Origin: Sminthopsis crassicaudata
Taxonomy: Eukaryota
Length of the DNA stretch: 64,000 bases
Direction: 5' to 3'
Assembly: GCF_048593235.1 (NCBI RefSeq)
Contig: NC_133617.1
Span: 524,376,958-524,440,957 of the forward strand
Under the pieces are notes generated by a model that was not told the DNA's origin, did not search any database, and was given only the letters and a program-made list of their open reading frames with translations. The position numbers and the translations under genes are program-made. Of the stretch, positions 4,330-47,900 are shown one piece after another (position 1 is the first letter of the stretch; each line of letters begins with the position of its first letter).

Positions 4330-5210
4330 GGGACAACAGAAAGTACAGACTTCAGTCAAAGGGCGCAGATTCCAGTCCGCTCCAATTCACTTTCCGCATC
4401 TCAGTAACACGGGGGCGTCGGTCTAGCTGCCCTCCAGGGCTCTTTCCAGCTCACATCTATGATCCTATCACTGCTCCTGTTTAAGGAGATGGATCCCGTC
4501 CGTCGGAGGGGGTGCTTAGAGGGGGGGGGGGGCAAGTTCCCCAGAGAGACGAGAGGAAAAGACAAGAGGGTCCCTTACAACTTGGGGGGGAAGGGAGGAG
4601 GTCGAGGTGATGTGATTTACGTTAGGAAGTCTCTCTCAGCAGGGAGGGGGTGTGTGTGAGACACTTGTGTGAGTATATACATGTTCGCGTACTTGGGGCT
4701 CCTGTGTGGATGTAAATGAGACGGAGATGGGGTGGGGTGGGGCTCCGGCCGAAGCTGTGACGAAAACTCCTCCCGCGAGGCGTGGGGGCGTGGCCGACGC
4801 CTCGCATTCCTTCGTCCCCTCTCCTCCCTGTTCCCTCCCCCCTCTCCTCTAGGCCCGCTCCGCAGCCGATCGGGGTTCCCCCTCACCTGGGCGCTCTCCA
4901 CTTGCCCATTGACCATCAACAGGAAGACCGTGGGGTTGGCTGTAGCCATGTCTCTGCGAGGGCCGCGTTGCTAAAAGTCTCTAGAACGCCCCTTAGAGAT
5001 GACGGTGCGCTGGGTGGGACACACTTCCTTGGAACGGAGCCTTCGCGCCTGCAGATGCTCTCGCGGCTGCCTAGTTGGCAAGGACCTTGCGGGAGCATGC
5101 GTGATTGCTTGGTTTGAGTGAGCGGTGGAACGCGAAGTGGGCGTTTGGAAAAGAAGGAGAAGAGTACGGGGTCCAGGCTCTACTAAGGCCGGGTTATGGC
5201 AAAAGGGGTG
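4330..5210. promoter_or_regulatory. CpG island / promoter of B9D1
   Basis: Locally high GC and CpG density around B9D1 exon 1 in an AT-rich background; boundaries approximate. Confidence 0.8.
4887..4949 (-). CDS. B9D1: B9D1 coding exon 1
   Basis: ATG at 4949; MATANPTVFLLMVNGQVESAQ then CAG|gtgagg donor; 63 nt; lies in a CpG-rich region. Confidence 0.96.
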
Positions 5211-5295
5211 AGGGGCAGAGACACTATAGTCCGGCCCTCCAACAGTCTGAGGGACAGTGAACTGGCTCCCTATTTAAAAAGTGTGAGGACCACTG
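5170..5295 (-). mobile_element. Partial non-autonomous hAT (OC1/OposCharlie1-like) element
   Basis: Reverse complement begins CAGTGGTCCTCACACTTTTTAAATAGGGAGCCAGTTCACTGTCCCTCAGACTGTTGGAGGGCCGGACTATAGT and contains TTTTGCCATAACC, shared with the MITE at 45680-45859; second TIR not recognisable. Family name from memory. Confidence 0.7.
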
Positions 5296-7325
5296 CTAGA
5301 GCCACAGGATGCTTAATTTTTGTTGTAATCTGAGCCTTTTGGGCAGTCTGCTGAAACTTCTTAACCCATCTAGAAGTGGTTTCTAGAACTGCTTTTGCCA
5401 CTCCCTTCACTACCTCTCAGAGCCACACTTGCTATTCCTAACTACAGATCTGACCATACTAGTTTTCTCTGTCCTCGAACCTTCCTCTTTCCTTTAGGAC
5501 AAAATACAAACTGTCTTTTTGGAATTTTAAAATCGTTAATTACCCGGGTCCATTTTATTTTTATAAATATTTTGTCCTTTGTGCTCCTTTATGCAGCCTC
5601 TGTTCTAATCAAACAGGCTTATTCAGAACGTTGGGAGTTCATACCCTGCCTCTGGGTCTGCAAGAGCTATCCTTCTGGCCTAGGATGAACTCCCTTCTCA
5701 CTCTCAAACCGTAGAAGCTTTAACTCCATCCTGAACCCAGCATCTAGCCAGTGGTCCATCCTGATACCCTGTGTTAGTGCCAGCTAAACTTTGGCTGCCA
5801 GGATGCATTCCACAAGGTCTAGTTCACACCAACTTTTCCATAATGCATAGAAGGATATACTGGCTATTTAAGGCTTTTGGAACCGAAAATGAAATCCTTT
5901 TTCTGTGAATGTAAATGGACTGATCTCGCTTGTATAATTGGAGATTGGTCTAGGGTCCCAGTCCTTAGAACTGCATTCCTGGTAGATGATAAATGAACAA
6001 CATTCTCTGCCTCTTGTTCTCAGGCATGCATAAATGTAGGGGCCCTTTGTCTGACTTCAGAGTACTCACAAATACTCTATTTATTGCGAGGTAACAAAAA
6101 AACTTTTTAATTGACTATTGAATAGAAAAGAATCACTAAGAAATGTGTCACTATATTCTGGTGAATTTCAAGTGGGAAGGATTGACTACCCTGAACTATC
6201 AGATACCAGGGAAAAGGCGACACCAGATGTATCAAAATCGTCTGTGATCCTATCAGCAACATGAGACCTGGAGTCAGCGTTAACTGAGTCTGGTGAGGAA
6301 CTTACAGGGCCACCAAGCACCCTGCTAGACCAGACTTAGCAAGTGGGCTGACACATCTTTAGCCAAGACACCACATCCTGTAAGGAGCGAGGCCAGCTGA
6401 GCAAGAGAAGTGCTTCTTACATCTGCAATTAACTTGATGAAAGGAAAGGGCTTCCAGGACCAGAAATTTCACATTCCCAAGATGTTCTCAACATGAATGT
6501 TTCAATACTTTTGTGTTTCAAGCTTGAGCCCACTCTCCTCAGGGACCAAATTTGTGCTGAAGAGAAAGTGTGTTCCTTTCTCCCCACTTAGAAGATGTTT
6601 TTTGTAACTTCTATCCTTGCTGTATCTCCTCAGTAAAAGCAAATTTTGTAAAAGTTAACTGCTATCGACTGATTCATTGGAATTGGGGAAACACATCCAA
6701 TAGGGGATTTGAATAGTAGTATTATAATACCTCAACCCCTCAATGATATCCAAAGATAGAATCTTGAGAGGGAAACTCGCCATCTCCACTCTGGGGACAC
6801 CATAAGCCTATATGATGAGAATTTGGAGATTGAGCCCCAAAGGGATGCTTTACTTGTCAGAGAATTTGATACATTCACATACCAATCAATTAACAAATAT
6901 TTAATAAATAAGTACCTACTGTATACTATGACCTGCAATAGAGTTACCAGGAATCTAAGTATAAGGATATGAAATAATTCCTGCTCTCAAAGAACTTCCA
7001 TCCTTGTTGATCCTTCATTCCTCCAAGAGGACCAAAGATATCACAATGTCTTCACTTGCATGTGAATTGGATTTAAGAGGGGCAGAGCTAAACAAAGTCA
7101 GCAGCCTCACTATCTACCTTCAAGGATACTGGCCACCTTGCCAATTGGCCTTATTATGAACTCATTAGAATCTCTTTTGTCCTTGATCTGTCCTGCAGCC
7201 AAACTTTCCTAAATGTATTGTCTCTTCCAATTAGAGTTTAAGATCTTTGAGAGCAAAAAAAATATTCTTTTTGTTTTTTTTTCTGTTTGTGTCTCCTGTA
7301 TTTAGCATAGTGTTTGGCACATAGG

Positions 7326-45679: not shown

Positions 45680-45859
45680 CAGTGGTCCTCAAACTTTTTA
45701 AATAGGGGGCCTCAGACAGTGGGAGCGCCTCACACTGTCTCCGCCCTCTCAGCCCAGCACTGGAAGTGTGCTTCAACATCACTTCCGGTCTGATTTTGCC
45801 ATAACCGGGTGGGCCACATAAATGTCCTCAGCAGGCCGGCCGTAGTTTGAGGACCCCTG
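45680..45859 (+). mobile_element. 180-bp hAT MITE (OC1/OposCharlie1-like) with TIRs and 8-bp TSD
   Basis: TIRs CAGTGGTCCTCAAACT / AGTTTGAGGACCCCTG (15 of 16 complementary); exact TSD TTCTAAAT at 45672-45679 and 45860-45867. Confidence 0.92.
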
Positions 45860-46419
45860 TTCTAAATCAATGCCTAAACAAATGCTTTATATTCCTAAGC
45901 TAATTTCCCAGGCCCCTTAAGAAATACCCTCTTTCACTACGAGCAAGAATCCCAATGCTAACAGAGGAGCCCACTAACAACTTCAGGGAAAGGAGAAATA
46001 TTTAAGACTGAGAGAAACTATTCTTATTTAGGTTTTCCATCCCGCCCACATTCGGGAGGCTGCGGGCTACACCACTGCCTTTTGGATGCCTATCTCAGCT
46101 ATCACACACTGTTACTGATGCTAACGCACCCGTACACTACGGAAGTACAGAGAGAGAAACGTGCTGTACCTCCCATGGCGTTGATCTGAGAGTCAAATAG
46201 ATCTACGTTCTAATGCAGTTATGCGACTGTCACACGTTGTCTTGGGGCTTCCTCTGTAAAATGATGGATCTAGATCGAATGATCCTCTATGGACTGGGCC
46301 AGCCACCAATATTCTCCCATTTCATTTCTCACATAATTAGCAATTAGCATCTCATATTAGGGAGAAGTTGAAACAGAAGAAATGGTCCAGGACGAACTCA
46401 ACTCCAGAACCCTGGTTCC

Positions 46420-47900
46420 GATCTGAACCTTCACTGCGAACCACTCTACTAAAAAAACCCCTCTCCGCGCAGCACACTGCAAGCACCACTCCAGCTGCTG
46501 AGAATTCGAGCAACTCAGAGCATGCGCAAGCTCAGGCGGAAAAACAAGCTCACCCTTCCCTTCCTTTCCCTTCTCCATTCACGCCTACTCCCTTCCTGCC
46601 CGACTCCTTTCCTCTTTCTTCCTAATTCCACAACTAGCCGGGCTTTTTCATTCACTTTCGCCCCGCCCCCAAGCTCTCCAACTCTCGTTGAGTGGCTGCG
46701 CAAAGCAGAGGTTCTGATAGGTCCACAAGAAGCAGGAGGCGGGGCTTCTTAACTGTAACTAAGGAAACGGATTGAGCGCCCCTTGGGTCCTTCCTTAATG
46801 CCCCGCCCATCCGCCTCTGGGAGCAGTTTGTGATTGGCTTAGCTTAGCTTTGCGTCGCGTCTTCCCAGCGGCTCCAGTCTCCAGGACTGTGATTGACAGA
46901 CTGACCACATTGTTCAATTTCCCTCCTCCTCAACCTTCCCTTTTCTCTGGCCCCAAGAACAAGCTCTGATTGGCTGTTAGAAGCTCGAGCTACATCTTCC
47001 TGAGACGTTTCTCATTCGTGGGCCCAGAGCAGCTCGTGCAGATCTCTGAGGTGGGTAGTCTTGGGGGTGCGCGCGCCCATTCGAAGCTGCGTGAACCCCT
47101 TGGGCGGATCCCTCAGCCCGCTCCAGGAGCTAAGTTCTCCGCCCCACTTCCCTTTCCTCTGCCGGCCTCCGATAGGATAAAGCGAACTGAGTAGGAGGGG
47201 ACTTGGAGAGGACAGGTCTTCGATTGGGTTTTAGGCAATGGGCGTGGCCAGAGGGGGTGGGGAAGGAGCGCAGCCTTGAGGTGGCGGCTGCTGTGAGTAA
47301 GTGTGCGGGTGACCCCAGGTGAACCTTTTCCCCACCTTCCCACCTCCATTTTCCCCTTTTATTTGACGATATGGGACTGCTCGGTATTTTAGGTCCCAGG
47401 GGAGGGCGTGGAGATGGCCTGTACCGCGCGTGAGGGCAGCCGGAGGTGGGGAGGGCAGCCTATGGGAGCTCCCTCCCCTCAGTCCCTGATGATTTTGCCC
47501 CTCTCCGGAGAACGCCCTTCCGCATCGGGCTCGACCCCCACCTCTGCTCTGGACCGATACCCGGGGCGTCCCCGCCCCAGCCTCCCCCTTCTTATCTTCC
47601 CTGCTTCTCTTCAGCCCTGACCCCCGGCCGCCATGGCCGAGCCCCGAAAGGAGGAGGACGACGATGAGGAAGGGGGCACCGGGGGTCGCCCTGAGGCCGG
47701 GAAGGCAGAGCCCCCCAACCCCGCAGCCTCAGTGGTGGCCAAGAATCTGGCGCTGCTCAAAGCCCGCTCCTTCGACGTGACTTTTGAGGTGGGGGATGAA
47801 TACGAGATCATCGAGACCATCGGTACCGGAGCCTATGGGGTGGTCTCTTCTGCCCGCCGCCGCCTCACAGGTGAGCTCTGTTACCTGTGACGCCCGGCGC
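46420..47900. promoter_or_regulatory. CpG island / MAPK7 promoter and non-coding first exon
   Basis: High CpG; GC boxes at 46661, 46738 and 46801; CCAAT (ATTGG) at 46833 and 46969; NRF1-like GCATGCGCA at 46520; donors gtgagt/gtaagt at 47293/47297; acceptor cttcag| at 47614 just before the Kozak GCCGCCATGG. Confidence 0.8.
47633..47870 (+). CDS. MAPK7: MAPK7 coding exon 1
   Basis: MAEPRKEE...[15 protein letters not shown]...SSARRRLT, donor ACAG|gtgagc. Confidence 0.97.

What the first reader, a model, noticed from the sequence alone, without database searches (positions are those of the whole stretch)
4949..47633. Extra coding gene inside the B9D1-MAPK7 interval: marsupial gain or eutherian loss
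Seen in sequence: the B9D1 and MAPK7 start codons are divergent and 42.7 kb apart, with the pseudo-protease between them in the B9D1 orientation. From memory, human and mouse B9D1 and MAPK7 are head-to-head neighbours with a shorter interval and no intervening protein-coding gene, and the prostasin/tryptase-like family it most resembles clusters elsewhere. Because the gene keeps ancestral intron positions, it arose by DNA-level duplication or is an old resident, not a retrocopy (inference).
Basis: partly seen in the sequence, partly recalled or inferred. Interest (0 to 1): 0.72.

Follow-up and report, generated by a model that had tools for sequence, protein, structure and literature searches.

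The report
Old dead-protease gene beside B9D1
The extra gene between B9D1 and MAPK7 in this marsupial (fat-tailed dunnart) is real, but it is neither a marsupial invention nor lost in all placental mammals: the same catalytically dead trypsin-like gene sits just upstream of B9D1 in the cat family, horses, rhinos, pigs, some bats and tree shrew (it is also annotated in a mole and a sloth), and seems to be missing only from some lineages, including human.

Summary
The B9D1 start codon (4949, minus strand) and the MAPK7 start codon (47633, plus strand) point away from each other and lie 42,684 bases apart. An intact 5-exon, 277-residue trypsin-fold gene (10413-16963, minus strand) lies between them, in the B9D1 orientation.

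The window is Sminthopsis crassicaudata. The gene is identical to the RefSeq model XP_074137813.1, "serine protease 33-like".

The interpretation "marsupial gain or eutherian loss" fails its own refutation test:
- **Eutherian orthologs.** Intact ones with the same exon structure lie 0.9-1.3 kb upstream of B9D1, in the same orientation, in donkey, pig, leopard and tree shrew.
- **Further taxa.** Orthologs are also annotated in other felids, horses, rhinos, warthog, rhinolophoid bats, mole and sloth, and in seven marsupials including Monodelphis.
- **Dead in all.** None of 21 orthologs keeps His57, Asp102, Ser195 or the activation site, so catalysis was lost before the marsupial-eutherian split.
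- **Still constrained.** Eutherian dN/dS is 0.50-0.58.
- **Not a retrocopy.** Intron positions match those of active paralogs.
- **Apparent losses.** No primate or rodent protein was found, and a published human gene list shows nothing but MIR1180 between B9D1 and MAPK7.

Verdict: an old therian gene that some lineages have lost. It is annotated but unstudied. Interest is moderate.

The parts
1049..1165 (-). B9D1 exon 3 (lies inside this stop-free stretch)
   Evidence: Pfam B9-C2 2.8e-7; 79-82% identical to B9D1 exon 3 in the pig, donkey, tree-shrew and leopard loci
3040..3120 (-). B9D1 exon 2 (approximate, lies inside this stretch)
   Evidence: Pfam B9-C2 1.5e-4; tblastn to the eutherian B9D1 loci
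4887..4949 (-). B9D1 exon 1 coding part, ATG at 4949
   Evidence: Translation; 81-86% identical to the first 21 residues of the gene called B9-C2 in L001, L002, L003 and L006
7326..7539 (.). N run between B9D1 and the protease-like gene (not filled)
   Evidence: flanks do not overlap; the adjacency of the two genes is repeated in five other assemblies
10413..10613 (-). Protease-like gene exon 5, ending in the TGA stop at 10413-10415. It holds the region where GDSGGP would be; Ser195 is absent.
   Evidence: Pfam Trypsin 1.8e-4, profile positions 181-220; PDB plasma kallikrein, chymotrypsin and prostasin; 100% identical to P0047 residues 212-277
10759..10925 (-). Protease-like gene exon 4 (167 nt, the same length in all five species modelled)
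12088..12347 (-). Protease-like gene exon 3 (Asp102 position replaced by Ser)
   Evidence: a HMMER search with this exon found the ortholog family; 100% identical to P0047 residues 69-155
13275..13422 (.). N run inside intron 2 of the protease-like gene (not filled)
   Evidence: exons on both sides are collinear with orthologous proteins, with no residue missing
13549..13696 (-). Protease-like gene exon 2 (no activation site; His57 replaced by Asp)
   Evidence: Pfam Trypsin 7e-4, profile positions 5-45; PDB collagenase 5e-8 and TMPRSS2
16906..16963 (-). Protease-like gene exon 1: ATG at 16963 and a Leu-rich signal-peptide-like start
   Evidence: judged a signal peptide by eye only
25994..26134 (.). 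N run between the protease-like gene and MAPK7 (not filled)
47633..47872 (+). MAPK7 first coding exon (3' end approximate)
   Evidence: Translation
49513..50664 (+). Open frame holding the large MAPK7 kinase-domain exon
   Evidence: Pfam Pkinase 4.2e-45
56203..57879 (-). MFAP4-like gene (two fibrinogen-C exons), tail to tail with MAPK7
   Evidence: Pfam Fibrinogen_C 1.7e-28 and 7.1e-9

Best explanation
The gene is an old single-copy therian gene. It is the dunnart ortholog of an unnamed family that annotation pipelines label 'serine protease 33-like' or 'tryptase gamma-like'.

Origin (inferred): a DNA-level copy of a prostasin/tryptase-type S1 protease gene, introns included, landed just upstream of B9D1 no later than the common ancestor of marsupials and eutherians. 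It lost the catalytic triad and the activation cleavage site before that split.

Descent (shown): the gene has since been passed down vertically, tandem to B9D1 and head-to-head with MAPK7. It is kept in marsupials and in several eutherian lineages under moderate purifying selection. It is missing from the annotated proteomes of other lineages, human included (the human gene list shows nothing there).

Function (inferred, not shown): a secreted, non-catalytic trypsin-fold protein that works by binding rather than by cleavage.

The 42.7-kb interval in the dunnart is large mainly because the non-coding stretches are long.
For: - **Identity.** All exons are 100% identical to P0047, XP_074137813.1 of Sminthopsis crassicaudata. 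The gene span and its distance to B9D1 equal those in that assembly.
- **Same position elsewhere.** A Trypsin-domain gene lies directly upstream of, and in the same orientation as, a 199-204-aa B9-C2 gene in donkey (1.0 kb), pig chr12 (0.9 kb), tree shrew (1.3 kb), leopard (1.2 kb) and sugar glider (3.4 kb). Those neighbours are B9D1 by exon matches. In Hipposideros bats the products are even annotated as 'B9D1 isoforms'.
- **Same gene structure.** Five exons, GT-AG introns, phases 1,2,1,0 and a 167-nt exon 4 in dunnart, pig, tree shrew, leopard and donkey.
- **Taxa.** Seven marsupials including Monodelphis, and eight eutherian groups.
- **Tree.** The family forms a clade at 100/100 support against the outgroups. 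Marsupials are monophyletic (97/95) with Monodelphis basal, as in the species tree.
- **Dead in all.** None of 21 orthologs has His57, Asp102, Ser195 or R-IVGG, whereas the outgroups have all of them.
- **Constraint.** dN/dS is 0.50-0.58 in the six eutherian pairs, with bootstrap upper bounds of 0.71-0.85. About 48 alignment columns are invariant across roughly 160 My (that age is from general knowledge).
- **Not a retrocopy.** Its introns sit at the same alignment columns and phases as four introns of the active paralogs (the cuckoo gene has one extra).
- **Nearest solved relatives.** Prostasin at 118 bits, then alpha-tryptase at 111 bits.
- **Expression hints.** Full-length products sit on 1.0-1.4-kb Logan contigs, too short to hold the introns.
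Against: - The 0.20-0.22 word shares in nine runs only suggest spliced RNA.
- MAPK7 was not seen within 10 kb upstream of the gene in the eutherian loci. For eutherians the 'between B9D1 and MAPK7' part therefore rests on published gene orders.
- Absence in primates, rodents and other groups is absence of annotated proteins, not of DNA. No human or mouse DNA was examined.
- A dN/dS of 0.5 is relaxed for a conserved gene. Several felid models are truncated to 138-140 aa.
- The donor family (prostasin versus tryptase versus PRSS33) is not resolved, because no tree with named paralogs could be built.
- The function is inference only; the structure model failed (pLDDT 41).
Confidence: 0.85

Rival explanations
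1. Marsupial-specific gain: the gene was copied into the interval after marsupials split from eutherians.
For: It is absent from the human gene list between B9D1 and MAPK7, and no primate or rodent protein was found.
Against: Intact orthologs with identical exon structure lie next to B9D1 in donkey, pig, tree shrew and leopard. The family forms one clade with marsupials and eutherians on opposite sides. All orthologs lack every triad residue.
Confidence: 0.01
2. Loss in the eutherian ancestor: the gene is ancestral, and all eutherians lack it.
Against: Eight eutherian groups carry annotated members of the family (felids, equids, rhinos, suids, rhinolophoid bats, mole, tree shrew, sloth), some of the models truncated. 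The ORFs checked here in donkey, pig, tree shrew and leopard are intact, and dN/dS is below 1.
Confidence: 0.01
3. Assembly artefact: the two N-bounded pieces that carry the gene were scaffolded into the wrong place.
For: All exons lie on two pieces bounded by N runs (7540-13274 and 13423-25993).
Against: The same gene-to-B9D1 tandem arrangement occurs in sugar glider and in four eutherian assemblies. Exon order, orientation and phases continue correctly across the intron-2 N run. The window's gene order, B9D1, MAPK7, MFAP4-like, matches human and cattle.
Confidence: 0.02
4. The dunnart copy is a non-functional relic whose open frame has survived by chance.
For: There is no catalytic residue. 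dN/dS is relaxed in eutherians. The gene appears dispensable in many lineages. No expression data exist for the dunnart.
Against: The ORF is intact and all splice sites are canonical. The Antechinus protein falls in the same 90%-identity cluster, and six other marsupial orthologs are 75-80% identical without breaks. Invariant motifs are shared with eutherians. The dunnart-eutherian dN/dS is 0.20-0.26, although dS is saturated.
Confidence: 0.06
5. The gene is older than Theria: monotremes, sauropsids or amphibians carry an ortholog, perhaps still active, in the same interval, and sequence search alone cannot tell it from paralogs.
For: Intron positions are ancestral. An active ortholog would look like any other prostasin-type protease. 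No monotreme or sauropsid B9D1 locus could be fetched.
Against: An exhaustive HMMER search with exon 3 over 1.84 billion representatives found only therian proteins among the named ortholog-like hits; the unnamed fragments look eutherian. The best non-therian profile hits lie at other loci: cuckoo next to a MYST acetyltransferase gene, burbot next to JmjC and amidohydrolase genes.
Confidence: 0.2

Closest known systems
Prostasin (PRSS8) and the tryptases, a subgroup of S1 serine proteases
   Same: They are the best solved-structure matches over the whole domain: prostasin 4e-27 for the dunnart protein and 118 bits for the family profile, alpha-tryptase 111 bits. Four introns are shared, with the same positions and phases, with the cuckoo protease gene beside a MYST-type acetyltransferase gene (KAT8-like and hence the prostasin locus only by my recollection of the human map). 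Three of the classical disulfide pairs are kept.
   Different: No His57, Asp102, Ser195, Asp189 or Cys191, and no R-IVGG activation site, in any of 21 orthologs. There is no hydrophobic C-terminal anchor; the tail is short and basic (by eye). The genomic location differs: it sits beside B9D1, whereas the cuckoo relative sits beside the acetyltransferase gene.
Trypsin-fold pseudo-proteases: azurocidin/heparin-binding protein, haptoglobin, the HGF beta chain, protein Z, and the 'inactive serine proteases' PRSS35, PRSS37 and PRSS54
   Same: A secreted trypsin-fold protein without a working triad. Exon 2 matches heparin-binding protein chains at about 1e-3. The protein-atlas search placed it nearest a cluster named 'inactive serine protease 54' (a generic lead only). 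The expected mode of action, binding rather than cleaving, is the same; this rests on general knowledge of those proteins.
   Different: It is not an ortholog of any of them. It forms a separate therian clade at a locus of its own. All three triad residues, the activation site and the S1 aspartate are gone together. No ligand, tissue or phenotype is known.
PRSS33 / tryptase gamma (the names RefSeq gives to these models)
   Same: The automatic names reflect best-hit similarity within the same subgroup.
   Different: The '-like' names are not orthology statements. The gene lies beside B9D1 and not in a protease-gene cluster, and it is catalytically dead. No PRSS33 or TPSG1 sequence was available here for a direct test.

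Membership tests
S1 (chymotrypsin/trypsin) peptidase family, Pfam PF00089 | Sequence homology over the two-barrel protease domain | tested here: met
   Pfam Trypsin on exon 2 (7e-4) and exon 5 (1.8e-4) independently. P0047 residues 30-267 align to prostasin residues 6-248 at 4e-27. The family profile scores 3.4e-33.
S1 (chymotrypsin/trypsin) peptidase family, Pfam PF00089 | Catalytic triad His57, Asp102, Ser195 | tested here: not met
   His57 is replaced by Asp in the dunnart and by Asn, Lys or Ser elsewhere. Asp102 is replaced by Ser in marsupials and by Gly, Ala or His in eutherians. Ser195 is absent, either substituted by Asp or deleted (the alignments differ). This holds for 21 of 21 orthologs; both outgroups keep the triad.
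S1 (chymotrypsin/trypsin) peptidase family, Pfam PF00089 | Zymogen activation site (Arg/Lys followed by Ile/Val-Val-Gly-Gly) and Asp194 to receive the new N-terminus | tested here: not met
   No such motif in any ortholog. Depending on the alignment, either Asp194 or Ser195 is missing.
Prostasin/tryptase subgroup | Closest similarity and shared intron positions | tested here: met
   PDB ranking: prostasin, then alpha-tryptase, then TMPRSS6 and beta-tryptases. Intron columns and phases match those of the cuckoo protease gene beside the MYST gene.
Prostasin/tryptase subgroup | Grouping inside that subgroup in a tree with named paralogs (PRSS8, 21, 22, 27, 33, tryptases) | not tested
   The word-indexed searches returned almost no paralogs, so no such tree could be built from tool-given sequences.
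Processed retrocopy | No introns, with a poly-A tail and target-site duplications | tested here: not met
   Four GT-AG introns at ancestral positions.
Decayed (unitary) pseudogene | Frameshifts, premature stops or broken splice sites | tested here: not met
   The 277-codon frame is intact and all splice sites are canonical. The same holds in pig, tree shrew, leopard and donkey.
Therian 'B9D1-adjacent' pseudo-protease ortholog group (unnamed) | Position directly upstream of B9D1 in the same orientation, the 5-exon structure, and loss of the triad in every member | tested here: met
   position; structure; residues; clade.

The most novel reading that the evidence does not exclude
This is an unnamed, roughly 160-million-year-old family of secreted dead proteases. 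It has been fixed beside the ciliary gene B9D1 since before the marsupial-eutherian split, is kept under selection in scattered mammalian lineages, and has been lost repeatedly, including in human and probably mouse. That pattern would explain why nobody has studied it. Its patchy retention, fast evolution and frequent merging with B9D1 in gene models would then point to a lineage-dependent role, for example in reproduction or at epithelial surfaces, or to transcriptional coupling with B9D1.
Probability: 0.3. Interest if true: 0.55.

Novelty: new member of a known kind. Interest (0 to 1): 0.4.

Why it matters
**Corrected history.** The gene is a shared therian inheritance with later losses, not a marsupial gain.

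**An overlooked gene.** It is a conserved pseudo-enzyme that is invisible from the human and mouse gene sets. Annotation pipelines give it misleading names ('serine protease 33-like', 'tryptase gamma-like', and even 'B9D1 isoform' in bats), which imply an active protease or the wrong gene.

**Use as a test case.** It could show how a dead protease stays under selection for some 160 My while being dispensable in many lineages. Pig, horse, cat and opossum all carry it and are workable study species.

**Limits.** It is one more member of a known class, trypsin-fold pseudo-proteases, and it is already present in public annotation. The interest is therefore moderate.

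Tried and rejected
- **Motif scan.** A regular-expression scan for catalytic motifs in all six frames found nothing in the interval.
- **Exon-by-exon searches.** Full-length work used the database protein P0047, which is identical to the exons. For dN/dS, codons were mapped inside a script from files in /data and were not printed.
- **Sequencing runs.** The look-up of sequencing runs gave only guessed run kinds.
- **Structure model.** The AlphaFold2 model built on the 13-row alignment was unusable (mean pLDDT 41). 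No fold search was run.
- **Third large protein search.** With a laxer threshold it added only two fish proteins, so a tree with named paralogs was not possible.
- **Protein atlas.** It returned only generic trypsin clusters.
- **Non-therian hits.** The cuckoo and burbot best hits were checked for synteny and lie at other loci.
- **MAPK7 in eutherians.** It was not found within 10 kb upstream of the gene in the four eutherian loci.
- **Failed look-ups.** Those for the sloth and Hipposideros proteins found no record. The wallaby and wombat look-ups listed no neighbouring gene within 10 kb and returned no DNA.
- **Other ORFs in the interval.** The 12 open frames tested with Pfam, among the longest elsewhere in the interval, gave no credible family; one SopD hit lies below the cut-off. 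Rfam found nothing.
- **Literature.** Searches found no paper on this gene.
- **Human DNA.** No human contig was fetched, compared or searched. The human status rests on a published gene list.

Full report
**What is in the window**

The window carries three N runs: 7326-7539, 13275-13422 and 25994-26134.

B9D1 lies on the minus strand.
- Exon 1 starts at ATG 4949.
- Exons 2 and 3 lie within 3040-3120 and 1049-1165 and hit Pfam B9-C2 at 1.5e-4 and 2.8e-7.

MAPK7 lies on the plus strand.
- Its ATG is at 47633.
- The large kinase exon lies inside 49513-50664 (Pkinase 4e-45).

A fibrinogen-C gene follows on the minus strand at 56.2-57.9 kb. It is MFAP4-like and lies tail to tail with MAPK7.

The two start codons face away from each other and are 42,684 nt apart, including 503 N of unknown true length.

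**The gene in between**

Reading the minus strand gives five coding exons:

| Exon | Coordinates | Length |
|---|---|---|
| 1 | 16963-16906 | 58 nt |
| 2 | 13696-13549 | 148 nt |
| 3 | 12347-12088 | 260 nt |
| 4 | 10925-10759 | 167 nt |
| 5 | 10613-10413 | 201 nt |

- Every intron is GT-AG and the phases are 1,2,1,0. The frame is 277 codons plus TGA.
- Exon 1 encodes a Leu-rich start that looks like a signal peptide (judged by eye).
- Searched separately by reference, exon 2 matches the N-terminal part of the Trypsin model and exon 5 the C-terminal part. Both match solved proteases.
- Family proteins hit nowhere else in the window, so the gene is single-copy here.
- The other open frames tested in the interval gave no credible family. 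Rfam found nothing.

**The N runs, tested first**

- No N run touches a coding exon.
- The run in intron 2 separates exons 1-2 from exons 3-5. Order, orientation and phase carry on correctly across it, and orthologous proteins align across the exon 2/3 junction without a missing residue.
- All exons lie on two N-bounded pieces, so the gene's placement depends on the scaffold. I therefore looked for independent assemblies (next section).
- The flanks of each run do not overlap.
- The lengths 214, 148 and 141 are irregular. I cannot tell whether they are estimated gaps or masked stretches. Nothing was filled.

**Identity and relatives**

A HMMER search with exon 3 against 1.84 billion representatives found a wallaby protein at 73% identity. 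It also found eutherian proteins at about 46% identity. Their names and sources show donkey, tree shrew, sloth and pig.

Word-indexed searches with the wallaby protein and with a family alignment, plus cluster listings, give the family's range.

- **Marsupials:** Sminthopsis, Antechinus, Monodelphis, Notamacropus, Petaurus, Dromiciops, Vombatus.
- **Eutherians:** at least twelve felids, four Equus species, two rhinos, pig and warthog, two Hipposideros and two Rhinolophus bats, Talpa, Tupaia, Choloepus.
- **The window's own protein:** P0047 (XP_074137813.1, Sminthopsis crassicaudata, 277 aa) is 100% identical to all window exons, with the same boundaries. The gene span (6,551 nt) and the distance to B9D1 (5,464 nt) equal those in GCA_048593235.1. 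The window is therefore dunnart, and the gene is already in RefSeq.
- **Not found:** no primate, rodent, ruminant, cetacean, caniform, afrotherian, monotreme or non-mammalian member. After the family (245 bits or more) the scores drop to a few short unnamed fragments (120 and 99 bits) and a cuckoo protein at 109 bits.

**Synteny**

In five other assemblies the family member lies directly upstream of a 199-204-aa B9-C2 gene, in the same orientation.

| Species | Gap to B9D1 |
|---|---|
| Donkey | 1.0 kb |
| Pig chr12 | 0.9 kb |
| Tree shrew | 1.3 kb |
| Leopard | 1.2 kb |
| Sugar glider | 3.4 kb |

- Those neighbours match the window's B9D1 exons 1-3.
- In Hipposideros the trypsin-like products are filed as 'B9D1 isoforms', which implies the same adjacency.
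- This answers the scaffolding worry on the B9D1 side.
- MAPK7 was not within 10 kb upstream in the eutherian loci.
- That B9D1 and MAPK7 are neighbours in eutherians comes from ordered gene lists for human (EPN2, B9D1, MIR1180, MAPK7, MFAP4; PMC13236699) and cattle (PMC7764440).
- The best non-therian hits lie at other loci. The cuckoo gene sits beside a MYST-type acetyltransferase gene; I take this for the prostasin locus, but that is from memory of the human map. The burbot gene sits beside JmjC and amidohydrolase genes.

**Vertical descent and age**

- Dunnart, pig, tree shrew, leopard and donkey share the 5-exon structure with identical phases. Exon 4 is 167 nt in all five.
- The four introns fall on the same alignment columns as in the active cuckoo and burbot genes.
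- A maximum-likelihood tree of 21 orthologs and two outgroups gives a family clade at 100/100 support. Marsupials are monophyletic at 97/95, with Monodelphis, then Dromiciops, then the Australian species. The eutherian families are each recovered.
- The eutherian side has weak support (60/90), and the root is set only by two long outgroup branches.

**A dead protease since before the split**

- None of the 21 orthologs keeps His57, Asp102 or Ser195. Both outgroups keep all three.
- His57 is Asp in the dunnart and Antechinus, and Asn, Lys or Ser elsewhere.
- Asp102 is Ser in all marsupials, and Gly, Ala or His in eutherians.
- At the GDSGGP site the alignments disagree on whether Ser195 became Asp or was deleted next to a retained Asp194. 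Either way the nucleophile is gone.
- The R-IVGG activation site, Asp189 and Cys191 are also absent in all.
- By parsimony the loss predates the marsupial-eutherian split.

**Is it still a working gene?**

- Open frames and splice sites are intact in every species modelled.
- About 48 alignment columns are invariant across marsupials and eutherians.
- Nei-Gojobori dN/dS is 0.50-0.58 for the six eutherian pairs, with bootstrap upper limits of 0.71-0.85. It is 0.20-0.26 for dunnart against eutherians, with saturated dS. This indicates purifying selection, but relaxed.
- Full-length products occur on Logan contigs of 1.0-1.4 kb, too short to hold the introns. This suggests spliced mRNA in pig-like, bat-like and one unknown eutherian sample.
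- For the dunnart itself I have no expression evidence.

**How it most likely works**

*Shown:*
- The protein has a trypsin fold by homology across the whole domain (prostasin 4e-27; family profile 3.4e-33).
- It lacks the catalytic residues, the activation switch and the S1 aspartate.

*Inferred:*
- It is secreted, to judge from the signal-like start and the lack of a hydrophobic tail.
- It stays in a zymogen-like state.
- It acts by binding a partner, as other trypsin-fold pseudo-proteases do.

The fast evolution and patchy retention would fit a reproductive or surface-defence role, but nothing here tests that. The structure model was too poor to use (pLDDT 41).

**Verdict**

- 'Marsupial gain' and 'loss in the eutherian ancestor' are both refuted.
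- The gene is an old therian resident, kept in marsupials and several eutherian lineages, and apparently lost in others, including human.
- It is already annotated, under misleading automatic names, but I found no paper on it.
- It is a new, unnamed member of the known class of trypsin-fold pseudo-proteases, and the interest is moderate.
- No human contig was fetched or compared, no N was filled, and no hand-joined exon model was sent to a search tool.

Noticed in passing
window 15772-16320 and 19323-19845: Two near-identical inverted repeats of about 550 nt (97-99% complementary, found as three collinear pairs) lie on either side of exon 1 of the protease-like gene (16906-16963). One is in intron 1 and the other upstream of the gene. 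Such a pair could invert the exon-1 segment by recombination. It probably relates to the LTRs noted in an earlier finding.
   Followed up: no
window 38503-38805 and 39244-39519 (+): Open stretches that look by eye like remnants of a LINE-1 ORF2. Pfam gave no supporting hit.
   Followed up: partly
Hipposideros armiger and H. larvatus proteins P0059, P0103-P0112: Trypsin-domain products of this family are annotated as 'B9 domain-containing protein 1 isoform X1-X6'. The gene models merge the pseudo-protease with B9D1, either through read-through transcripts or through an annotation error.
   Followed up: no
Felid proteins P0072, P0074, P0075 (tiger, cheetah, lion): These models are only 138-140 aa, whereas cat, leopard, clouded leopard and jaguar have 277 aa. 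This is either decay under way within Felidae or incomplete models.
   Followed up: no
L001 11928-12403 (donkey) and L002 11271-12140 (pig): Annotated isoforms (P0025, P0026, P0029) read through an intron instead of splicing: intron 4 in donkey, introns 3 and 4 in pig. They replace the last exon with an unrelated tail. The canonical exon 5 is intact in both species.
   Followed up: partly
window 13549-13696 (exon 2): Dunnart and Antechinus have a Cys where the other orthologs have Trp (E-W-V becomes E-C-V). This gives 9 cysteines against 8 in the other marsupials. All orthologs lack Cys191 but share a new invariant Cys in a P-D-C motif, which may pair with the Cys220 equivalent.
   Followed up: partly
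window 7326-7539, 13275-13422, 25994-26134: The N runs have irregular lengths (214, 148, 141). I could not tell whether they are estimated gaps or masked stretches. Their flanks do not overlap.
   Followed up: partly
The tool says its filter also trips by chance. Nothing further was done with them.
   Followed up: no
window 56203-57879 (-): An MFAP4-like gene with a fibrinogen-C domain lies tail to tail with MAPK7. It completes the conserved order B9D1, MAPK7, MFAP4.
   Followed up: partly
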